8,512 nucleotides of DNA from the IMG/VR virus record IMGVR_UViG_3300027933_000045, positions 1-8,512 of that record; one strand, 5' to 3'. Positions within the stretch are counted from its first letter, which is position 1. Each line of letters begins with the position of its first letter. Both the position numbers and the translations under genes were made by a program. Under the pieces are notes generated by a model. It was not told the origin of the DNA. It did no database searches and saw only the letters and a program-made list of their open reading frames with translations. Positions 1-8,140 of the stretch are shown one piece after another.

Positions 1-277
1 CGAATCTGTGGCTCATCTGAGTGTAAGAGGCTATTCTATGTCTGACCAACTGGTGACTAGCGACTCTAGATATGTCCTCTATAGAGAAAGTATAAACGGA
101 GTGTTCCAAGACTGACCAATACCCGTGCAGTATAGCGTCTTTAATCCATGTTTCCATTTCTTCTTTGGTCATGTCTTTCTCATGATGTTCCCATCCCTTC
201 CTACTCCTGGACATCTTAGATGCTATAGCCACGACTTTCTCTCCATCTTTAGAAAAAGAAACTAATTGAATTTTCAT
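1..277 (-). CDS. thyX: Flavin-dependent thymidylate synthase ThyX, N-terminal 92 aa (runs off the left edge)
   Basis: Manual translation from ATG at 277: [92 protein letters not shown]. It contains the ThyX signature RHRxxSxxxxSxR ([13 protein letters not shown]), plus SVLEH and ISR-x3-QLVRHR. Not in the supplied ORF track. Confidence 0.95.
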
Positions 278-292
278 TTATATCATCTTTTT

Positions 293-481
293 CTATTTCA
301 ATCTCATTATTTTTTCTACTCTGGCTTTTGGATTTGTTTCTTTTTCCAATTCCTCTTGCAAGAACTTTTGTAACGCTAATCTTATCACTTCACTTCTATA
401 CATTCTATGATTCATTGCATATGTATCCATTTTTATTATTAGATCTTCATCAGCTTTGAATACAATTACTCTAAGTCCCAT
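293..481 (-). CDS. Ribbon-helix-helix (CopG-like) DNA-binding protein, 62 aa
   Basis: Alternating beta strand RVIVFKAD, helix, then RSEVIRLALQKFL (classic RHH helix B). The start abuts the upstream stop (TAAATG), with an SD-like GGGG upstream. Confidence 0.85.
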   Translation of the reverse strand: MGLRVIVFKADEDLIIKMDTYAMNHRMYRSEVIRLALQKFLQEELEKETNPKARVEKIMRLK

Positions 482-760
482 TTAAATTACCCCTTCTACT
501 CTCTTTACTGTATTCATTTTTCCTACAGTTATGCCAATTGTAAATTCTTTATCTTCTGAGAATTTATATAGCCTAATTTCAAAGTAAAAAGTTCTATTTC
601 TCATTGTTAAATAACCGTTAATTATTCTTTCCTTCTTTGTATAGAATAATATCTCGAATTTTCCAGAAAAATTTATTGCACCGTTTAAAATATTATATAT
701 ATCTTCCTCTTCCATTCTATTTATTATATTTTTAATTTCTTGAAGGGTTTGTGAGTCCAT
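482..760 (-). CDS. Hypothetical viral protein, 92 aa
   Basis: Clean ORF with SD GAGGAG just upstream and a TATA+GTC promoter at 787-798. Translationally coupled to the RHH gene. Confidence 0.75.
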   Translation of the reverse strand: MDSQTLQEIKNIINRMEEEDIYNILNGAINFSGKFEILFYTKKERIINGYLTMRNRTFYFEIRLYKFSEDKEFTIGITVGKMNTVKRVEGVI

Positions 761-782
761 TTCTCCTCAAGATCAGATAGGC

Positions 783-798
783 ATATGACGTTTAAAAA
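783..798 (-). promoter_or_regulatory. TATA+GTC promoter for the 92-aa/RHH(/thyX) unit
   Basis: Minus strand TTTTTAAA-C-GTC-ATAT. Confidence 0.7.
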
Positions 799-822
799 CA
801 TTTATATTTTTAGACTTTTAGT

Positions 823-1437
823 TCAGAACAGTGATCCATAGCATTTTCCTTTAAATTCACAGTTCTTACAGAAATATGAATTAACAGGCGGTATATTTTT
901 ATGATCTTCCATCTTTATATATTCTTTAAATTTCTTTATCCATTCTATCGCTTTTTGTATATATTCATCTATCAATTTCTTGTCTATTAAGAATTGTTTA
1001 ACTTCTCTATTTAGTCTATTCAAATATATAATATAGATATTGTCAATTTTATAATTCTGTTGCTGAAGTAGATAGTAATATATTGCAACTTGGTAAAGAT
1101 GATACTCTTTTATTTGGAAATAGTTAGTTGAGATTGTTTTTAACTCTATAAGATCATTATTACAAATTAGATCTATCCTTCCTGATATTTTCATTCCCTC
1201 AATTTCTCCATTTATTTCAATTTCAGGTTTACAATTTAGTTTTTCTTCAAAATAATGCTCAACTTTCTCATGATACTGTTCACCAAGATCAAGACTAATT
1301 TCATTTACTGCTTTCTCAAATTCAAATTTTCTACTAAAATAGCTTTTTCTAAAGCAAATTCCAATTTCGCTAGGAAATATTGTATCTTCTGGATATTTCA
1401 TTTTGAAACTTTGCTTAACAAATTCTTCATAATTCAT
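823..1437 (-). CDS. cas4: Cas4-like / RecB-family PD-(D/E)xK nuclease with Fe-S cluster cysteines (SIRV2 gp19/ORF207-like)
   Basis: N-terminal C (GICFRK), GRIDL...IELKT catalytic motifs, QVAIY (QxxxY), and C-terminal [10 protein letters not shown]. Third gene of the conserved rudivirus/lipothrixvirus cluster. SD GGTGA upstream. Confidence 0.9.
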
Positions 1438-1439
1438 AG

Positions 1440-2750
1440 TTATTCACCGCCAAAGTTGCTAAATCTCATAAAATTAATTATTTGGTTACAAATTTCATCA
1501 TTAGTTTTTTGGCCTATTTGAAGATCAATATCAAAGGCCTGAAGAATCAGTTGTATATCGATACTTTGTTCTTGTCTTCTGGACTGAAGAGTATCACAGA
1601 TTACATAATTTGTAGTTCTATTAATCTTATCTTGAATGATTTCTACTAAGGCCTTCAAAATTGAGGGATATAAAACTCTTCCATTTATTACTCTTTCATA
1701 AGTTTTTTTCACTGCTAATTGTATAATATGAATTCTGTCTAGAATAGCAGAAGTAAATATTTCATAATTGGCTAAATAGTCCTCAAGGTCAGGAGTTTTT
1801 AGTCGATCTATTGTCATAGAATATGGATTTCCTGCGTAAATAATTGGAATGCATTTTTGTATAGTTGCTGATTTGGATTCTGAACCGGCCCCTCTTGTCC
1901 ATATACAATTTTCAATTCCAGTTGATAAAGTTGAATTTATGGCACTTAATTCTTTTGCAGAAAATCCATCTTTCCAAGTTTGTATTTCGTCAAAAATTAG
2001 GCCATTTGATAAAAATACTGCACCGTACATATTATTTCTTGCATCATAAACCAAATTCGCATATGTTGGAGATTCTGTATAATAACGAAAGTTAAAGACT
2101 TCCTGAAGAATCATGAAATTTGTTGTTTTTCCAGTTCCTCTGTTGGAAATTTCGATAAAATTAATTTGTCTTTTTGTGATTGGAGATTTAAAAAGTGGCA
2201 TTAATCTAGGAAGTGTAAGAAATATATCATTTACTTCCATTTTTGTTGGGTCATATCCGAAAGCCTGAAGAAGAAGAGCATATGTTTGTTTTTCTGAATT
2301 AGCTATCTCGAATAATTCTTTTGCAATTTCATAATTATTTGGTGGTTCAATTGAATAAATATCTGATATATACCAATTTTCTACTCCTTTTCTTATTTTA
2401 ACAAACATATAGCTAGTTACTAAATTATAGAAATCATCTGGATTATCTGCAATTTGATGAGGATCAAAAGAGCCTACAAATCCATTTTGAAATCTTGCTA
2501 TTATTTCATTTCCTTTAACTTTAAAATTTGTTATCTTAGAGATGAATTTTATTTCGTTGAAAAATGGCAAGTTAGAGTTAAAATATTGTTGATCAGTCCC
2601 GCGTTTATAAGCCTTTAAAATTCCATTTTTCTTAGATTCTTCAATTTGTTTTTCACCAATTATAAGATTTAAAATTCTTTCAGTATCACGGGGGTTGTAA
2701 AAAAATGAGTGAGATTTTACTTTATCTAGAAATTGCGTTGAACTGTTCAT
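1440..2750 (-). CDS. AAA+ ATPase (MCM/BrxL-Lon-like ATPase domain; SIRV2 gp18/ORF436-like, ssDNA annealing)
   Basis: 436 aa. Walker [10 protein letters not shown], Walker B LIFDE, sensor-1 IYAGN, Arg-finger-like AILDRI. Size and position between the ssDNA-binding protein and the nuclease match the rudivirus cluster. Confidence 0.88.
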
Positions 2751-2766
2751 GTAGAAAAAAATGATC

Positions 2767-2781
2767 TATGACGTTTTAAAA
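2767..2781 (-). promoter_or_regulatory. Internal TATA+GTC promoter for the ATPase
   Basis: Minus strand TTTTAAAA-C-GTC-ATA overlapping the SSB stop codon, about 24 nt from ATG 2750. Confidence 0.6.
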
Positions 2782-3174
2782 CTCTTCCTCAACGTTCTTT
2801 TTACTTGCCTTTCTTGGTTTTTCCGCTTTTTCACTTTCTTCTTCATTACCAAGTTCCAATTCTTCTTCTCTTGGCATGTTACTATTTCTTGGAGTGAATC
2901 TTATGTATTCGTTCAGTAAGTCGGCATATTTATTTAAGAATTCGCTAATTAGTCTTAGATCTTCAGCATCACTCGCAGTTATTCCTATCTGTTTCCTAAA
3001 ATTATTAGCGGAATGTATTGTCATACTGTATCTTACCGAACTTCCGTTAGGTATTGCATTTAGCTGAACTACTATTCTCCGTATTCCCTTAATTTTTAGC
3101 ACTCTTGACATTATTTTATTTTGTTCTCTTGCTTGTTTACCTATCTCATCTATTATTTCTTTGAGGGACGCCAT
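2776..3174 (-). CDS. ssDNA-binding protein (SIRV2 gp17/ORF131-like)
   Basis: 132 aa with a basic folded core (RVLKIKGIRRIVVQLNA, NNFRKQIGI) and a disordered charged tail ending EEEF, typical of SSBs. First gene of the cluster. SD GGGAG. Confidence 0.85.
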   Translation of the reverse strand: MASLKEIIDEIGKQAREQNKIMSRVLKIKGIRRIVVQLNAIPNGSSVRYSMTIHSANNFRKQIGITASDAEDLRLISEFLNKYADLLNEYIRFTPRNSNMPREEELELGNEEESEKAEKPRKASKKNVEEEF

Positions 3175-3200
3175 ACATACTCCCTAACTAAAAACTTAGA

Positions 3201-3220
3201 ATATGACATATTTATATATT
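3201..3220 (-). promoter_or_regulatory. TATA+GTC promoter of the SSB-ATPase-nuclease operon
   Basis: Minus strand AATATATAAATATGTCATAT, nearly identical to the svtR promoter at 4308-4326. Confidence 0.72.
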
Positions 3221-3263
3221 TATAGCTATTCGGAAGAAGACAGAAGTAGATATAAAAAAATAC

Positions 3264-3554
3264 TTAACTTATTTGGAAGAATATAGATCTTATTATTTTA
3301 GCAATTTTAATATTATACTTTCTAGATAGTTCTTCTAATTTTTGGTAATATAGCTCATCTACCGTAAAAAATACTCTTTCGTCATAAATTTCTCTACTTT
3401 CCATTTCTCTAAAGTCTTTTTGTTGATTTAATATTTTGTCTATCTCTTGCTTTATTAGCTCACGTTTTTCATAAAAAAGATTTTTATACTTTGCGGGTAT
3501 TCTAAGTTCTATATACTTATTTTTTTGTTTCTTCATACTTTTCTCTTCTTTCAT
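3264..3554 (-). CDS. Basic 96-aa protein with RHH-like C-terminal domain (possibly tandem RHH)
   Basis: RVFFTVDELYYQKLEELSRKYNIKIAKIIRSIF fits the RHH pattern. The N-terminal KYIELRIPAKYK resembles a second ribbon. Confidence 0.65.
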   Translation of the reverse strand: MKEEKSMKKQKNKYIELRIPAKYKNLFYEKRELIKQEIDKILNQQKDFREMESREIYDERVFFTVDELYYQKLEELSRKYNIKIAKIIRSIFFQIS

Positions 3555-3576
3555 CTACAATATAAACGTTCCATAT

Positions 3577-3589
3577 ACATTTAAATGTC
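3577..3589. promoter_or_regulatory. Palindromic bidirectional TATA (rep / 96-aa gene)
   Basis: ACATTTAAATGT is a perfect 12-bp palindrome. TTTAAA lies 23 nt from rep ATG and 26 nt from the opposite ATG. GTC follows on the rep side. Confidence 0.6.
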
Positions 3590-3607
3590 AGGTTTTCATT
3601 TGAGGCT

Positions 3608-3955
3608 ATGGACTATGAAAAAGTTTTTAGCTTTCACTTTCTTTACGTTTATACTTATTTTATTACGATCGCAACAAATTATCGATATAATTCAGTTACT
3701 CCAATTTTTCAAAGATTTAAAAAATATGCTTATGGACATGATAAAAATTCACATATTTTTTCAGTTAAGGAATATACAACTAAGGCACATGGCTTACATT
3801 ATCATATTTTATATTTTACTAATAAAAAATTGGATTATTCTAGAGTTCATGAGAAAATGCCAAAACATTCAGATATCAGAATTCAATTAGTTCCAAAAAC
3901 AAAAAGTGACATAAAAAAAGTTTTTACTTATATGTTAAAAAATCAAATTACTTAA
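3608..3955 (+). CDS. rep: HUH-superfamily Rep endonuclease (SIRV ORF119-like replication initiator)
   Basis: Motif I-like YFITI, E..T...GLHYHIL (HUH motif II) and YMLK (YxxK motif III). About 115 aa, divergent from the SSB cluster as in rudiviruses. Confidence 0.9.
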   Translation: MDYEKVFSFHFLYVYTYFITIATNYRYNSVTPIFQRFKKYAYGHDKNSHIFSVKEYTTKAHGLHYHILYFTNKKLDYSRVHEKMPKHSDIRIQLVPKTKSDIKKVFTYMLKNQIT

Positions 3956-3956
3956 A

Positions 3957-4253
3957 TTATTTAGTTTGTTGAGTTTGCTGATTTTGATGTTGTTCAACTT
4001 TTTTCTGTGCTAAACTATTAACATCTCTTAATGTATCCATATTCAATAATGCATTAACACCAAGAGTTGTAGTATCTTTAATTGATTCAACTGCTGAAAT
4101 TGTAGATTTTGTCATTTGATCAATTGCTATTTGAAATGATTGATTTGCCTGTTTTTGATTGTATAAATGTACTACTTCTCCAACTACATAACTTGCAATT
4201 AATATGCCCATTAATGTTAGAAATCCTTCTAGTGCCACTGTTTCTAGGCTCAT
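3957..4253 (-). CDS. PVAP: virus-associated pyramid (egress/lysis) protein, SIRV2 P98 / STIV C92 family
   Basis: 98 aa with one N-terminal TM helix, then GEVVHLYNQKQ...AIDQMTKST...ESIKDTTTLGVNALLNMDTLRDVNSLA, recognisable as the SIRV P98 sequence. Confidence 0.92.
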   Translation of the reverse strand: MSLETVALEGFLTLMGILIASYVVGEVVHLYNQKQANQSFQIAIDQMTKSTISAVESIKDTTTLGVNALLNMDTLRDVNSLAQKKVEQHQNQQTQQTK

Positions 4254-4307
4254 ACTAATTCTATTTTTAGAAAGATGGTCAATAATAAACTTTTCTCAAA
4301 AAATCAA

Positions 4308-4333
4308 AATATATAAATATGTCATAATATTCA
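4308..4333 (+). promoter_or_regulatory. svtR promoter (TATA+GTC) with adjacent AATATTCA
   Basis: AATATATAAATATGTCATAATATTCA. Confidence 0.7.
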
Positions 4334-4351
4334 TTTGATGAATGAGGAAAA

Positions 4352-4513
4352 ATGGCAGAAAAGTTAAAAAGTCAAAAAGTAGTTTTTGGAATTAACATAA
4401 ATAAGGAATTAAAGTTGAAGTTGAAGAAATATTGTGTTGAGCAGGATAAAACGCTAACTGAGGCTATAGAAGAGGCAATTGTTGAATATCTGCAGAAAAG
4501 GGGAGTTAAATAA
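4352..4513 (+). CDS. svtR: SvtR-like ribbon-helix-helix transcriptional repressor, 53 aa
   Basis: Manual translation MAEKLKSQKVVFGININKELKLKLKKYCVEQDKTLTEAIEEAIVEYLQKRGVK resembles SIRV1 ORF56b (VFGI...LK.YC......LT.AIEEAI.EYLQKR). SD GAGG at 4344-4347, TATA+GTC at 4312-4323. Below the ORF-track cutoff. Confidence 0.88.
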   Translation: MAEKLKSQKVVFGININKELKLKLKKYCVEQDKTLTEAIEEAIVEYLQKRGVK

Positions 4514-4555
4514 AAATACTGAGAAAGTTTTTGAATTGAATAAAAAAACTCTTTT

Positions 4556-5074
4556 TTAACTATTAAATTTTGGCAATGTTACATTATTTTGATATTGATA
4601 TTTGCCATGATACGGATTTTCAACTGGTGTTAATGTCTTTGCAAAAATTAAATGTAGAAATCTTTGCCCAGTTTCAAGTTTTATTGGAAATTCTGAGCCT
4701 ACAATTTCTATAGTTAATTGTCCTCTAAATCCTGCATCCACAATTGTCGGCGGAATAAATAGGCCAAGTCTTGCGAAAGTTGAACGTAAATTTACAAATG
4801 CCATTACATCATTCGGGAGTTCTATATATTCAAGTGTTGTCATTAATGCATGTTCATGCGGAAAAACTATAAAATGATTAGAATTTGTGACAGTATAGAA
4901 ATCTTCAATATTTTTACCGATTTCAAAAACTTGATCTGTTTTTCTTAATCTTGCAAATTGTGGGCCAATTCTCAAATCTATGCCGTTTTCTCTTATAATT
5001 TCTTCTGAAAAAGGTCTAATAAAAATTAGGCCTTTTTCAAGATAATACTTTAAATCACGGTCACTTAAGATCAT
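4556..5074 (-). CDS. dcd: Trimeric dCTP deaminase/dUTPase family enzyme, 172 aa
   Basis: [40 protein letters not shown] and PYHGKYQ motifs, typical of Sulfolobales Dcd and the SIRV dUTPase. Exact activity cannot be determined from sequence. Confidence 0.9.
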
Positions 5075-5101
5075 GTTTGATCTGTTTTTTGACTTAAGAT
5101 A

Positions 5102-5120
5102 TGACGTATATATTTCTAGT
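5102..5120 (-). repeat. 19-bp promoter repeat, copy 1 (dcd/dUTPase promoter)
   Basis: tgacgtatatatttctagt, 18/19 identical to 5426-5444. Confidence 0.75.
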
Positions 5121-5245
5121 TATTTTAAAGCGTGAATTATTGTTAAAAATATAAGCGTAAGTAGAAAAATATCTAATGTAATATAAAAAAACATTATTAT
5201 TTTAAATTTTCTTTCAGTAAGCCATATTTTGTTTTTCTTATCCAT
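5120..5245 (-). CDS. Small single-TM protein, 41 aa
   Basis: MDKKNKIWLTERKFKIIMFFYITLDIFLLTLIFLTIIHALK: basic N-terminus plus hydrophobic C-terminal helix. Start overlaps the upstream stop, GAGGG lies upstream, and the ORF fills the gap exactly. Confidence 0.55.
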   Translation of the reverse strand: MDKKNKIWLTERKFKIIMFFYITLDIFLLTLIFLTIIHALK

Positions 5246-5408
5246 GTAGATCTAATCCCTCATCAAGTAATACAACATCATTCATGGGGGGGTATGTAGG
5301 AATGAATTTAACCCAGTGACCATAGCATAATATATAACAATCCTCTCCATCACATCTAATTTTATTTTTATCACATTCGGTTTTAAAAGACATGTTTTCC
5401 CATCTCAT
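5238..5408 (-). CDS. Small Cys-rich protein, 56 aa (alternative start 5393)
   Basis: MRWENMSFKTECDKNKIRCDGEDCYILCYGHWVKFIPTYPPMNDVVLLDEGLDLHG. Directly downstream of the TATA+GTC promoter at 5427-5439. Confidence 0.6.
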   Translation of the reverse strand: MRWENMSFKTECDKNKIRCDGEDCYILCYGHWVKFIPTYPPMNDVVLLDEGLDLHG

Positions 5409-5425
5409 CTTTACTTTTGGTTATC

Positions 5426-5444
5426 TGACATATATATTTCTAGT
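5426..5444 (-). repeat. 19-bp promoter repeat, copy 2
   Basis: tgacatatatatttctagt, 18/19 identical to 5102-5120. Confidence 0.75.
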
Positions 5445-5686
5445 CATGTCTTTCTTTTCAATATTTCAATTTCTAGTTTAAGTTCATCAATCTCATCATA
5501 AATATCAGCAAAAATATCATAAATTACAGTATATAAAAATGCAAAAATTCCAGATGCAAAAATTACTACTATTACAATATCTAACATATTTTTTGTTAGA
5601 ATTCCTAATGATAAAATTATTAAAGCTAAAAATGTAAAAAATAGAAAAAATAAGAAGAGTAATATTCTCCAAAAATCTCTATCCAT
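5444..5686 (-). CDS. Two-TM membrane protein with acidic coiled-coil tail, 80 aa
   Basis: Two long hydrophobic stretches, then DIYDEIDELKLEIEILKRK. TATA+GTC promoter at 5715-5727. Confidence 0.7.
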   Translation of the reverse strand: MDRDFWRILLFLFFLFFTFLALIILSLGILTKNMLDIVIVVIFASGIFAFLYTVIYDIFADIYDEIDELKLEIEILKRKT

Positions 5687-5741
5687 ATTTTGTCATTTTT
5701 ATTTTCAGTTTTCTGACAAATTTATAAGTTTCTATTTCAAA

Positions 5742-5864
5742 TTATTTGGAAGATTTTGTATTAAGCTCATAATATGCCTCAATCAACATTTTTCTAAATT
5801 CTTCTAAATCTTCTTTACTTTCAATCACTAAGTAACCTTCTCCATCTTTTTCTTCAATTCTCAT
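5742..5864 (-). CDS. Small acidic protein, 40 aa (in-frame alternative start 5888)
   Basis: MRIEEKDGEGYLVIESKEDLEEFRKMLIEAYYELNTKSSK, protein-like (beta-hairpin plus amphipathic helix). BRE/TATA AAAAGTTTTTTAAA ends 24 nt upstream, consistent with a leaderless mRNA. Confidence 0.65.
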   Translation of the reverse strand: MRIEEKDGEGYLVIESKEDLEEFRKMLIEAYYELNTKSSK

Positions 5865-5920
5865 GTATGAATATTTGTTATTAAACATTTAAAAAACTTT
5901 TCCTCATTCCTAATTTCTAA

Positions 5921-6220
5921 TTAAGAAGTTTCAGAGTTCGGTTTACCACAAAAAACTACAATATTAAACATATTTCTGTTATATCTCCAGTTTATAGTTA
6001 TATATTGTGGATATCGGAAAGTCTTTAGTATATATCTCAGAATTCCAATTCCCTTTTTTTCGTAAAATTTTATTGAAACATTCATTATAATTTTGATAGT
6101 TACTAGATTATTATCTTCCAAAACTAAATAATCATAAAGATTGTTAGTGTAACGTATTTTTAACCATTCAAATAGCTGAGTTGTATATTTTATACATTCG
6201 TATTTGACAATCTCATCCAT
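5921..6220 (-). CDS. Hypothetical protein, 99 aa
   Basis: ORF with AAAAAGTATTTAA promoter-like element about 25 nt upstream. No recognised motif. Confidence 0.65.
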   Translation of the reverse strand: MDEIVKYECIKYTTQLFEWLKIRYTNNLYDYLVLEDNNLVTIKIIMNVSIKFYEKKGIGILRYILKTFRYPQYITINWRYNRNMFNIVVFCGKPNSETS

Positions 6221-6383
6221 ATTACAGATTTAGCAATATGTCGATTAAATACTTTTTTCATGTTTTAGATATAGTGTCTAATACTGTATTTTATATGGGA
6301 AGTAAGAGTCAAATTGCAAACTAGTCATATACATAATATTATGAATATAGTATGTTTTCTTAGTGAAAGATCAATGACGACAA

Positions 6384-6424
6384 TAAATATTCATCATATT
6401 TATTATAAGGCGTGAATATTTAAA
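6384..6424 (+). promoter_or_regulatory. MCP promoter with 10-bp inverted repeat
   Basis: TAAATATTCA (6384-6393) and TGAATATTTA (6413-6422) with a 19-nt spacer. The right arm overlaps TTTAAA at 6419-6424. Confidence 0.6.
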
Positions 6425-6456
6425 ATATCAAATTGTGTAGATTAAATTGACCAAAA

Positions 6457-6861
6457 ATGGCAAAAGGTCACACACCAAGATCCTATTCGCAAAGATATGC
6501 TAAGTGGAGTGCAAAATTCACCTCATTTTCAAATCCTACCGTGGCATCTACTGTATTGTCTAATGTTGCACCAATCGCACAGCAAAATTTCCAAACTCAT
6601 GCCCCAAAGTTCACTGCTGTAAATGAGCAAGTATCCGCAGTTTTGAGCGAATATGGAATAACTGGGCCGAACAGGGCAATTTATCAAGGCTTTGGTCTTA
6701 AGATAGCTAGGGCACTGAACAGACTTGGAAGCGGGCCCGCATTAGCAAATATGATTAGCGGATTGAAGGCATATTATATCTCTGCATTCAATGCAAATCC
6801 AACTGTATTAGATGCAGTAACTAATATAATAACTGGATCGCCAACCGGATATGTAAGCTGA
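6457..6861 (+). CDS. Rudivirus major capsid protein (SIRV ORF134-like)
   Basis: 134 aa. MAKGHTPRSYSQRYAKW...YGITGPNRAIYQGFGLK...NIITGSPTGYVS is the characteristic rudiviral A-DNA-wrapping MCP. Confidence 0.97.
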   Translation: MAKGHTPRSYSQRYAKWSAKFTSFSNPTVASTVLSNVAPIAQQNFQTHAPKFTAVNEQVSAVLSEYGITGPNRAIYQGFGLKIARALNRLGSGPALANMISGLKAYYISAFNANPTVLDAVTNIITGSPTGYVS

Positions 6862-6876
6862 TTAATTCGTTTAAGC

Positions 6877-6900
6877 TATTTATTTTTCTTTTTTTGTTTT
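6877..6900 (+). terminator. Oligo-T archaeal terminator after MCP
   Basis: Long T-rich tract about 15-40 nt after the MCP stop, between convergent genes. Confidence 0.6.
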
Positions 6901-6907
6901 ATAAATT

Positions 6908-7072
6908 CTATTCTTCATATTTTGTTTCAACATATTCATAAGTTTTACTACTTATTCTTTTCATATTTCTCATTCTTACATTTGGGTGATGTTTTTTCAA
7001 ATGATAATTTGCATTTCTCCAAGTTTTGAATATTCTATTACAAACTGGACATTCGTATAGGAAGAGACCCAT
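6908..7072 (-). CDS. C2H2 zinc-finger protein, 54 aa (start revised from 7135 to 7072)
   Basis: YECPVCNRIFKTWRNANYHLKKHH is a canonical C2H2 finger. ATG at 7072 lies 23 nt from the minus-strand TATA at 7095-7102 and avoids overlap with the glycosyltransferase. Confidence 0.82.
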   Translation of the reverse strand: MGLFLYECPVCNRIFKTWRNANYHLKKHHPNVRMRNMKRISSKTYEYVETKYEE

Positions 7073-7077
7073 GAGAC

Positions 7078-7102
7078 TTTTTAATGTCATGACGTTTAAA
7101 AA
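7078..7102. promoter_or_regulatory. Interlocked divergent promoters sharing GTCATGAC
   Basis: TTTTTAA-T-GTCATGAC-G-TTTAAAAA. Each strand reads TATA-N-GTC with an ATG 23-25 nt downstream. Confidence 0.72.
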
Positions 7103-7108
7103 TTCTTC

Positions 7109-8140
7109 ATGGAAGTGTCGAACACAGTTCGCCACAAAACCGTAATTTTAACTATGAATTATTCTTCTATCCGAAATATTTCGGATGATATAGCCCAAGT
7201 CCTTAGAAAAAATGGTGAAATTGTCACAATTTCAACAAATCCGTATTTAATTCCACAATCTGATAAATTAATAATATTTATGCCGTTTCATCCCCCATCA
7301 TTAAATCCATATCTTTATACTTTTAGAGAATTTAAAGGAAAGAAGTACTTTTATACTACTTGTGATGGCACACCGAACTTAGAAATTGTTAATAAGTACT
7401 TATTAGAAAATATAACATTTATTCCAAATTCAAAGTTTACGGCTAAAAATTTACAAGAAGTTGGCCTACAAATTGATCTTCCAGTTTTCCACGGTTTAAA
7501 TTTTGAAATTGTAGAAAAAGCTGATAAATTAGCTATTCAGATGAAAGAAAAAATAGACAAAGATTTTCCTAGTTCCATAAAATTCGGAATAGTTTCAGGT
7601 TTGACAAAAAGAAAAAATATGGATTTGATGCTTAAGGTCTTTCAGGAAATAAATACTAAAATTCCAGAATTGGCCAAAAAAGTTCACTTTTTCGTTATTT
7701 CTCATAAGGACTTTAAGAATTATGAAGTTCCCGAAAATGTGCATTTTGTTAGTGAATTTGGTCTAAATCCCAGAGAATACATTTTCGCTTTCTATAAAAC
7801 TATGGATTTTGTTATTGTCCCTTCAGGAACTGAAGGATTCGGAATGCCGGTTCTAGAAAGCATGGCCATGGGAACTCCAGTCATTCATCAACTTATGCCC
7901 CCATTTGATGAATTTACATCTTGGCAATGGAACCTTTTGATTAAGTCTTCAGAAATTGAGGAATATTATGATAAAACTCATGGTCAAAAATGGAAAATTC
8001 ATAAGTTTGATATTCAAGATATGATAAATGCAATTATGATAGCAAACGAATTAAAAGATAAAGATGAAAGAAATAAGAATTTAAGAGAATTAGCTAAAAG
8101 ATATGATATTGAAAATTTATATGTTAGATTTTTAGAATGA
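7109..8140 (+). CDS. GT-B (GT4-like) glycosyltransferase, SIRV ORF335-like
   Basis: RKNMD and PSGTEGFGMPVLESMAMGTPVI (E-x7-E GT4 motif). Position next to the MCP gene as in rudiviruses. Confidence 0.93.
   Translation: MEVSNTVRHKTVILTMNYSSIRNISDDIAQVLRKNGEIVTISTNPYLIPQSDKLIIFMPFHPPSLNPYLYTFREFKGKKYFYTTCDGTPNLEIVNKYLLENITFIPNSKFTAKNLQEVGLQIDLPVFHGLNFEIVEKADKLAIQMKEKIDKDFPSSIKFGIVSGLTKRKNMDLMLKVFQEINTKIPELAKKVHFFVISHKDFKNYEVPENVHFVSEFGLNPREYIFAFYKTMDFVIVPSGTEGFGMPVLESMAMGTPVIHQLMPPFDEFTSWQWNLLIKSSEIEEYYDKTHGQKWKIHKFDIQDMINAIMIANELKDKDERNKNLRELAKRYDIENLYVRFLE

What the first reader, a model, noticed from the sequence alone, without database searches (positions are those of the whole stretch)
1..5074. 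ThyX plus dUTPase/Dcd together: possible complete viral dTMP supply route
Seen: both genes in one window flanking the replication block. Knowledge: Dcd/dUTPase yields dUMP (directly or via dUTP) and ThyX converts dUMP to dTMP. As I recall, the model rudiviruses carry one or the other (SIRV dUTPase, ARV1 ThyX). Inference: this AT-rich virus may reroute dCTP/dUTP (e.g. from degraded host DNA) to dTTP and keep uracil out of DNA, which matters because archaeal family-B polymerases stall at uracil.
Basis: partly seen in the sequence, partly recalled or inferred. Interest (0 to 1): 0.6.

Follow-up and report, generated by a model that had tools for sequence, protein, structure and literature searches.

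The report
Rudivirus carries host-derived dcd and thyX
This fragment of a rod-shaped virus of hot-spring archaea carries two host-derived genes that together can make the DNA building block dTMP, but the same pair is already annotated in a described relative and is common in uncultured ones, so it is ordinary.

Summary
The window is a whole 8,512-bp IMG/VR contig of a SIRV-like rudivirus. It has a ThyX gene start at 2-277(-), 92 codons cut by the contig end, and a 172-aa Dcd-family gene at 4556-5074(-). They flank the SSB/ATPase/Cas4-nuclease/Rep block.

The implied novelty does not hold. Stygiolobus rod-shaped virus, deposited in 2008, already annotates a putative thymidylate synthase and a putative dUTPase around the same block. 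STSV1 and STSV2 also carry both. I could assess both gene slots in 20 rudivirus genomes or contigs: 10 carry both, 1 ThyX only, 5 Dcd only and 4 neither. Each gene is a presence/absence cassette, and each has 60-81% identical orthologues in 45 of 47 Sulfolobaceae genomes.

An overlapping contig with a near-identical allele keeps thyX open for 241 aa, so truncation here is probably an assembly edge.

The Dcd-like protein passes the dCTP-deaminase model. It retains the Ser/Arg/Glu deaminase residues that dedicated archaeal dUTPases lack. Its SIRV1 homologue has measured dUTPase activity, so a bifunctional dCTP-deaminase/dUTPase feeding ThyX is the likeliest reading, untested.

No thymidylate kinase was found, so the route ends at dTMP. 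Low interest: a new member of a known kind.

The parts
2..277 (-). thyX, first 92 codons of a flavin-dependent thymidylate synthase; the gene runs off the contig's left end
   Evidence: Pfam Thy1 E 1.4e-23. TIGR02170 86.6 bits. [13 protein letters not shown] motif. The near-identical allele on L085 is open for 241 aa and covers the whole TIGR02170 model at 197 bits.
293..481 (-). 62-aa ribbon-helix-helix regulator directly upstream of thyX (15-nt gap)
   Evidence: phrog_876 transcriptional repressor E 6e-16. It is conserved next to thyX in related contigs.
482..760 (-). 92-aa conserved rudiviral protein of unknown function
   Evidence: phrog_8868 E 8e-17.
823..1437 (-). Cas4-like PD-(D/E)XK nuclease (204 aa)
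   Evidence: Pfam PDDEXK_1 and Cas_Cas4; phrog_1706 E 1e-59.
1440..2750 (-). 436-aa ATPase (BrxL/Lon-like ATPase domain), a conserved rudiviral core gene
   Evidence: Pfam BrxL_ATPase E 2e-15; phrog_6542 E 2e-233. Annotated as ATPase in SIRV3 and as putative Holliday junction helicase in SRV.
2776..3174 (-). 132-aa ssDNA-binding protein (PHA01746-like)
   Evidence: Pfam PF21017 E 6e-53. The SIRV3 homologue is annotated as ssDNA binding protein.
3264..3554 (-). 96-aa RHH protein
   Evidence: Pfam RHH_3; phrog_11115 E 2e-43.
3608..3955 (+). 115-aa Rep-like protein (117-like_vir / REP_ORF2-G2P)
   Evidence: Pfam PF21578 E 2e-44 and PF23343 E 2e-6.
3957..4253 (-). P98 pyramid-forming egress protein
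   Evidence: phrog_8367 E 1e-53.
4352..4513 (+). 53-aa 56B-like RHH protein
   Evidence: Pfam PF21432 E 1e-9.
4556..5074 (-). [quoted passage not shown]
   Evidence: TIGR02274 176 bits above the 92.8 cut-off. The archaeal dUTPase model NF002598 scores 54 bits, below its 130 cut-off. E123 aligns with the catalytic Glu of M. jannaschii DCD-DUT. The residues are conserved in all rudiviral and host orthologues.
5102..5118 (-). promoter-like A/T box followed by GTC, 27 nt upstream of the dcd ATG; a second copy lies at 5426-5442(-) upstream of the 56-aa ORF
   Evidence: Exact repeat TAGAAATATATAYGTCA, 2 matches against 0.23 expected. Promoter function is inferred only.

Best explanation
The window is a fragment of an uncultured SIRV-like rudivirus, nearest the Yellowstone Usarudivirus isolates. 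It carries two separate accessory cassettes of host (Sulfolobaceae) origin.

The first is a Dcd-family enzyme, most likely a bifunctional dCTP deaminase/dUTPase that turns dCTP, and dUTP, into dUMP. The second is the flavin-dependent thymidylate synthase ThyX, which methylates dUMP to dTMP.

Expressed during infection, they would duplicate the host's own route. That would raise dTMP supply for a 72% A+T genome and lower dUTP. Phosphorylation of dTMP and all cofactors remain host functions.

Shown: gene identities, conserved catalytic residues, cassette-like presence/absence, host-like sequences, and frequent co-occurrence. Inferred: bifunctionality, expression, benefit to replication, and intactness of thyX in this particular genome.
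For: The rudiviral context is an MCP hit to PF12193 at 252 bits plus P98, and about 79% nucleotide identity to SIRV4-11 over 822-8140.

Catalytic residues: the deaminase Ser/Arg/Glu and the Asp are conserved in the window, in all rudiviral copies including SIRV1/2/3, and in host orthologues. The Glu aligns with that of M. jannaschii DCD-DUT and of 4XJC. The Thermococcales-type chains 8Y1W and 9LN0 have Met there, and the S. tokodaii 'dUTPase' 2YZJ has Ala. SIRV1/2 dUTPase activity was confirmed biochemically, according to PMC1796864 citing Prangishvili 1998.

Host origin: 45 of 47 Sulfolobaceae genomes have ThyX at 65-81% identity and a Dcd orthologue at 60-72% identity, and most also have a distant Dut-like paralogue. 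In the ThyX tree viral and host sequences interleave; SRV groups with Stygiolobus at SH-aLRT 98.

Cassette behaviour: all four presence/absence combinations exist. ThyX changes state at least 4 times and Dcd at least 3 times on the ATPase tree. A clean ~1.25-kb thyX indel separates L026 from L004.

The thyX of a near-identical overlapping contig is open for 241 aa and scores TIGR02170 197 bits. Complete relatives encode 249-257 aa.
Against: No enzymatic data exist for this protein. The only characterised viral homologue was reported as a dUTPase, and I could not read that paper to see whether dCTP was tested.

The two genes lie 4.3 kb apart, with an opposite-strand gene between them that implies separate transcription units. 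No correlated gain or loss could be demonstrated, because there were too few independent pairs. G+C of contigs with and without the genes overlaps at 25-30%, so there is no sign that the genes track base composition. The 3' two-thirds of thyX is absent from this contig.
Confidence: 0.75

Rival explanations
1. The Dcd-like protein is only a dUTPase, as the SIRV1 enzyme was named. It sanitises the dUTP pool and supplies dUMP from dUTP alone, with no rerouting of dCTP.
For: SIRV1/2 dUTPase activity was confirmed biochemically. There is precedent that an archaeal protein annotated as dCTP deaminase (P. furiosus) is an efficient dUTPase without deaminase activity (PMC5122711). SRV and STSV records name the homologue dUTPase.
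Against: The dedicated archaeal dUTPase-type chains lack the catalytic Glu: Met in 8Y1W and 9LN0, Ala in 2YZJ. The window protein, SIRV1/2/3 and the host orthologues all keep Ser/Arg/Glu. It passes the dCTP-deaminase equivalog at 176 bits against 92.8 and fails the archaeal dUTPase equivalog at 54 bits against 130. Hosts keep a separate distant Dut-like paralogue beside this orthologue.
Confidence: 0.3
2. The two genes are unrelated accessory cassettes that happen to sit in the same genome. There is no selected two-step module, and each is gained and lost on its own.
For: All four combinations occur: 10 both, 1 ThyX only plus ARV1, 5 Dcd only, 4 neither. The independent-pairs test gives no signal. 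The genes sit in different slots 4.3 kb apart.
Against: Both is the commonest state among assessable genomes. It recurs in several ATPase-tree lineages, in SRV, in bicaudaviruses STSV1/2, and as adjacent genes in haloarchaeal tailed viruses and in contig L112. The reactions are consecutive steps of one pathway. The sample is too small and too related for a real test.
Confidence: 0.35
3. thyX in this virus is a truncated or decayed remnant, so the route is not functional here.
For: Only 92 codons are present, and the contig ends inside the gene.
Against: The fragment has no stops and keeps the ThyX motif. Contig L085 overlaps the left end with 4 mismatches in the first ~370 nt, and its ORF continues for 241 aa across the whole TIGR02170 model. 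Relatives at 93-98% identity over the 92-codon fragment have intact 251-257 aa genes.
Confidence: 0.07

Closest known systems
Stygiolobus rod-shaped virus (SRV, Azorudivirus; FM164764 / NC_025375)
   Same: It is a rudivirus with both ORF257 'putative thymidylate synthase' and ORF168 'putative dUTPase' on either side of the ATPase (ORF440) and nuclease (ORF199) block. ThyX is 80% and Dcd 52% identical to the window's.
   Different: The gene order and orientation differ: in SRV, dcd follows the nuclease and thyX sits near the terminal repeat. Its ThyX groups with a Stygiolobus host gene rather than with the window's clade. It belongs to a different genus.
SIRV1/SIRV2 dUTPase (ORF158) and the Yellowstone SIRV5/6/7 'dCTP deaminase'
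   Same: They are orthologous Dcd-family genes in the same slot, at 59-60% and 79% identity, with identical catalytic residues. The SIRV enzyme has measured dUTPase activity.
   Different: These viruses have no ThyX (all Sulfolobus-named hits are accounted for by STSV and SMV). SIRV7 has other ORFs where the window has thyX.
ARV1 thymidylate synthase ThyX
   Same: A rudiviral ThyX, 79% identical over the fragment.
   Different: ARV1 has no Dcd-family gene, and its thyX sits elsewhere in the genome.
STSV1/STSV2 (Bicaudaviridae) thyX + dut
   Same: Sulfolobales viruses with both genes: ThyX 86% and Dcd 68-70% identical to the window's.
   Different: An unrelated virus family with 75-kb genomes; the genes lie about 13 kb apart.
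M. jannaschii bifunctional dCTP deaminase/dUTPase (PDB 1OGH) and 4XJC
   Same: Same family. The catalytic Glu, Ser and Arg align. This is the proposed working model for the viral enzyme.
   Different: Similarity to 1OGH is restricted to residues 76-165 at E 2e-20. The viral and Sulfolobales proteins are shorter (172 against 204 aa) and have a PPT loop where 1OGH and 4XJC differ. Activity is untested.
Haloarchaeal tailed viruses (HF1/HF2, HRTV, HJTV) with adjacent dCTP deaminase and thymidylate synthase
   Same: Archaeal viruses that pair the same two steps (the annotations under the matches).
   Different: Only about 29% identical. The genes are adjacent. They are tailed viruses of halophiles.

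Membership tests
ThyX, flavin-dependent thymidylate synthase (PF02511 / TIGR02170) | Match to the Thy1/ThyX profile above the curated cut-off | tested here: met
   Pfam Thy1 scores 84.2 bits against a cut-off of 24.8 for the 92-aa fragment. TIGR02170 scores 86.6 against 87.9 for the fragment and 197 bits for the near-identical allele on L085.
ThyX, flavin-dependent thymidylate synthase (PF02511 / TIGR02170) | ThyX signature motif RHRxxSxxxxSxR | tested here: met
   [13 protein letters not shown] at residues 79-91.
ThyX, flavin-dependent thymidylate synthase (PF02511 / TIGR02170) | Complete catalytic domain (about 210 model positions) in one open frame | tested here: inconclusive
   The contig ends after codon 92. 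L085, with 4 mismatches in the shared ~370 nt, is open for 241 aa and covers model positions 2-210 of 211.
ThyX, flavin-dependent thymidylate synthase (PF02511 / TIGR02170) | FAD/NADPH-dependent methylation of dUMP | not testable with these tools
   Needs an enzyme assay or thyA complementation.
dCTP deaminase family (TIGR02274; trimeric dUTPase superfamily) | Profile match above the equivalog cut-off | tested here: met
   176.4 bits against a cut-off of 92.8, covering model positions 1-179 of 180.
dCTP deaminase family (TIGR02274; trimeric dUTPase superfamily) | Catalytic Ser, Arg and Glu of the deaminase site. Residue roles are from my own knowledge of E. coli Dcd S111/R115/E138 and M. jannaschii E145. 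| tested here: met
   S98, R102 and E123 are present. E123 aligns with the Glu in the LEIV stretch of 1OGH and the LTLEL stretch of 4XJC. All are conserved in 38 viral and host orthologues.
[quoted passage not shown] | Both deamination of dCTP and hydrolysis to dUMP by one enzyme | not testable with these tools
   Indirect only. The homologue SIRV1 ORF158 has dUTPase activity and keeps the deaminase residues. I know of no sequence signature that separates mono- from bifunctional enzymes.
Archaeal monofunctional dUTPase (NF002598; P. furiosus / MJ1102 type) | Profile match above cut-off, and loss of the deaminase Glu | tested here: not met
   53.9 bits against a cut-off of 130. The Glu is retained, whereas 8Y1W and 9LN0 have Met and 2YZJ has Ala.
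Rudiviridae | Rudiviral major capsid protein plus the conserved SSB-ATPase-nuclease block and the P98 egress protein | tested here: met
   PF12193 scores 251.6 bits. The MCP is 90-91% identical to SIRV4-11.

The most novel reading that the evidence does not exclude
The rudiviral 'dUTPase', including the classic SIRV1 enzyme, is really a bifunctional dCTP deaminase/dUTPase. Its repeated pairing with an independently captured host ThyX is a selected two-step module that converts dCTP directly into dTMP. This would shift the infected cell's pyrimidine pool toward T for a 72% A+T genome that is replicated by uracil-sensing host polymerases.
Probability: 0.35. Interest if true: 0.35.

Novelty: new member of a known kind. 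Interest (0 to 1): 0.15.

Why it matters
It matters little on its own. Viral capture of dUMP- and dTMP-forming enzymes is a classic auxiliary strategy. This exact pair is already annotated in a rudivirus (SRV), in STSV1/2 and in haloarchaeal viruses.

The modest value lies in three points. First, dcd and thyX behave as independent host-derived cassettes in otherwise syntenic rudivirus genomes, with natural plus/minus variants that could serve as a fitness experiment. Second, the textbook SIRV 'dUTPase' retains a full dCTP-deaminase site, so its substrate range deserves re-testing. Third, the route stops at dTMP, so the virus still depends on host thymidylate kinase and folate-type cofactors.

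Tried and rejected
Literature: full-text searches combining rudivirus, thymidylate synthase and dUTPase terms gave 0 to 3 papers, none discussing the pair. The two key papers, Prangishvili 1998 (JBC) and Vestergaard 2008 (J Bacteriol), are not held. I therefore could not check whether dCTP was assayed on the SIRV enzyme, and I used the GenBank annotation of SRV instead. The ThyX entry in the figure legend of Baquero et al. 2020 suggested that ARV3, MRV1 or SSRV1 might carry it. Whole-record Pfam searches found none in those three, nor in ARV2 or SMRV1.

Coupled gain/loss: an independent-pairs test on the ATPase tree is uninformative, with 1-3 usable pairs. This gives no verdict for or against coupling.

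Base composition: contigs with and without the genes overlap at 25-30% G+C, so I dropped the idea that the genes track A+T content within the family.

'Complete route': thymidylate kinase (PF02223) was not found in five related rudivirus records, three of them at least 90% complete.

Absence calls: for fragments, absence refers to the syntenic slot only. Whole-record checks confirmed no ThyX in five further contigs, including one complete 25.5-kb genome with terminal repeats.

Not used, because the family scans settled identity: the large protein searches, structure prediction, fold search, complex prediction and read mapping. The sigma-70 promoter scan was not used because it does not apply to archaeal promoters.
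Full report
**What the window is**

The window is an entire IMG/VR record of 8,512 bp, with CheckV completeness 27%. It is identical to metagenome contig Ga0208549_101348. G+C is 28%.

Its gene set is rudiviral. It has the Sulfolobus rod-shaped virus coat protein (PF12193, 252 bits; 90-91% identical to SIRV4-11), the P98 pyramid protein, a GT1 glycosyltransferase, and the SSB/ATPase/Cas4-like nuclease block. At the DNA level, positions 822-8140 are about 79% identical to the Yellowstone SIRV isolates of genus Usarudivirus. Positions 1-822 have no match there.

**Checking the observation**

On the minus strand, 2-277 encodes the first 92 residues of a ThyX (Pfam Thy1 E 1.4e-23; phrog thymidylate synthase E 3e-32; TIGR02170 86.6 bits). 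It carries the RHRxxSxxxxSxR signature and runs off the contig.

Also on the minus strand, 4556-5074 encodes a complete 172-aa Dcd-family protein (Pfam DCD E 1.8e-32; TIGR02274 176 bits against a cut-off of 92.8).

The genes between them are, in order:
- RHH62
- a 92-aa protein
- the nuclease
- the 436-aa ATPase
- the SSB
- RHH96
- a 115-aa Rep-like protein on the plus strand
- P98
- a 56B-like RHH on the plus strand

thyX follows RHH62 after only 15 nt, at the end of a long minus-strand gene string. dcd ends a different minus-strand string. An A/T-rich box followed by GTC lies 27 nt upstream of its ATG, and this box is repeated upstream of the 56-aa ORF. Promoter function for the box is only inferred.

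**Is thyX broken?**

This contig cannot say. Contig L085 (Ga0208447_103188) overlaps the window's left end, with 4 mismatches in the first ~370 nt, and extends 446 nt further. Its thyX frame stays open for 241 aa to its own end and covers the full TIGR02170 model at 197 bits. Relatives that are 93-98% identical over the 92-codon fragment have intact 251-257 aa genes. Truncation is therefore most likely an assembly edge.

**Is the pair unusual in rudiviruses?**

No. tblastn and whole-record Pfam searches of the 23 distinct rudivirus genomes in the phage collection gave these results:

| State | Genomes |
|---|---|
| Both | SRV |
| ThyX only | ARV1 |
| Dcd only | SIRV1 (two variants), SIRV2, SIRV3, SIRV5, SIRV6, SIRV7, SBRV1 |
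| Neither | ARV2, ARV3, MRV1, SSRV1, SMRV1, SIRV4, SIRV8-11, three OM4017xx isolates |

The SRV GenBank record already labels ORF257 'putative thymidylate synthase' and ORF168 'putative dUTPase', on either side of ORF440/ORF199. STSV1 and STSV2 also have both. Several haloarchaeal tailed viruses have adjacent dCTP deaminase and thymidylate synthase genes.

In IMG/VR, many uncultured rudivirus contigs share the window's order: dcd, P98, Rep, RHH, SSB, ATPase, nuclease, p92, RHH62, thyX.

I scored a slot as absent only when its flanks were present. Of the 20 genomes or contigs in which both slots could be judged, 10 have both (including the window and SRV), 1 has ThyX only, 5 have Dcd only and 4 have neither. 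ARV1, which has ThyX only, is not counted in that table. One 'neither' case is a complete 25.5-kb genome with terminal repeats.

On a tree of the core ATPase, the 'both' state occurs in several lineages. ThyX changes state at least 4 times and Dcd at least 3 times. L026 differs from its close relative L004 by a clean ~1.25-kb indel that removes thyX.

So both genes are presence/absence cassettes, and their co-occurrence is common. The test for correlated gain or loss had too few independent pairs to say anything.

**Origin**

In the Sulfolobaceae, 45 of 47 genomes encode a ThyX 65-81% identical to the viral one. 45 of 47 also encode a Dcd orthologue 60-72% identical to the window's, and most carry in addition a second paralogue at 29-42% identity.

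In the ThyX tree, viral and host sequences interleave. SRV pairs with a Stygiolobus genome (SH-aLRT 98). ARV1 falls with an Acidianus MAG. The window's clade is separate (a quick tree with few hosts sampled).

The virus therefore duplicates functions its hosts already have, using host-derived genes.

**What the Dcd-like enzyme does**

It passes NCBI's dCTP-deaminase equivalog and fails the archaeal dUTPase equivalog, at 54 bits against a cut-off of 130.

In the HMMER alignments to solved structures, its E123 sits at the position of the catalytic Glu of the M. jannaschii bifunctional enzyme (1OGH; the listed variants 2HXB, 2HXD and 3GF0) and of 4XJC. S98 and R102 match the RSSxxR motif. The short Thermococcales-type chains 8Y1W and 9LN0 have Met at that position. 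The S. tokodaii 'hypothetical dUTPase' 2YZJ has Ala. The roles of these residues come from my knowledge of E. coli Dcd (S111, R115, E138) and M. jannaschii E145.

All rudiviral copies, including SIRV1/2/3, and all host orthologues keep S, R, D and E. The SIRV enzyme is reported to have biochemically confirmed dUTPase activity (PMC1796864 citing Prangishvili 1998). A P. furiosus protein annotated as dCTP deaminase is a pure dUTPase (PMC5122711), so annotation alone is unsafe.

Taken together, a bifunctional dCTP deaminase/dUTPase is the most likely reading, at roughly even odds. A plain dUTPase is the main rival. Either way the product is dUMP, the ThyX substrate.

**How complete is the route?**

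The two steps from dCTP or dUTP to dUMP to dTMP are covered. Thymidylate kinase was not found in five related rudivirus records. These include a 90%-complete near-identical relative, a 100%-complete 40.7-kb contig that has both genes, and SRV. FAD, NADPH and the C1 carrier must also come from the host.

The proposed benefits are more dTTP for an A+T-rich genome and less dUTP for uracil-sensing host family-B polymerases. These rest on established enzymology and on analogy (for example the A+T-rich genome argument in PMC10733785), not on anything tested here. Within the family, G+C does not differ between carriers and non-carriers.

**Verdict**

The biochemical reading is reasonable. This is a new, uncultured member of a known kind: a rudivirus with host-derived dUMP- and dTMP-forming auxiliary genes. 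Interest is low.

Noticed in passing
L112 (G020:C24:1-8023), genes at 2277-2810(-), 2834-3370(-), 3316-4062(-): This 8-kb, 45% G+C contig is binned in a Sulfolobaceae MAG, the same genome as locus L065, which is titled Ca. Aramenus sulfurataquae. It carries second copies of dcd (59% identical to the window's) and thyX (74% to the L002 ThyX). Between them lies a 178-aa ORF that weakly matches thymidylate kinase (Pfam 22 bits, below the cut-off of 27; phrog_761 E 4e-6). The other ORFs are orphans plus an RHH protein. It may be a mobile element or virus with a thyX-tmk-dcd cluster, which would be a fuller dTTP module than the rudiviral one.
   Followed up: partly
window 5102-5118(-) and 5426-5442(-): An exact 17-nt repeat, TAGAAATATATAYGTCA (an A/T box followed by GTC), lies about 17-27 nt upstream of the ATGs of dcd and of the 56-aa ORF. 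There are 2 matches against 0.23 expected by chance. It looks like a shared archaeal-virus promoter element.
   Followed up: partly
L026:3173 versus L004:5535-6782: L026 and L004 are collinear at 84% nucleotide identity up to this point and sit in the same small ATPase-tree clade. They differ by a clean ~1.25-kb indel that holds the end of the RHH gene and the whole thyX. This gives a natural plus/minus thyX pair.
   Followed up: yes
L078 (JAVYOH010000020.1, Saccharolobus sp. MAG, contig end): A Dcd fragment at the end of a MAG contig is 87% identical to window residues 86-172. That is far closer than any host orthologue (60-72%). It is probably rudiviral DNA binned into, or integrated in, a host MAG.
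   Followed up: no
window 482-760(-) versus L002, L003, L085: The 92-aa protein (phrog_8868) between the nuclease and RHH62 is far more divergent among close relatives (66-70% identity) than its neighbours (97-100%). The L085 overlap also turns mismatch-rich from about position 469. This points to a local recombination or diversification hotspot.
   Followed up: no
window 6908-7135(-): A 75-aa ORF overlaps the start of the glycosyltransferase gene on the opposite strand. It has a C2H2 zinc-finger match just under the Pfam cut-off (24.7 against 25.2 bits) and belongs to phrog_6283.
   Followed up: no
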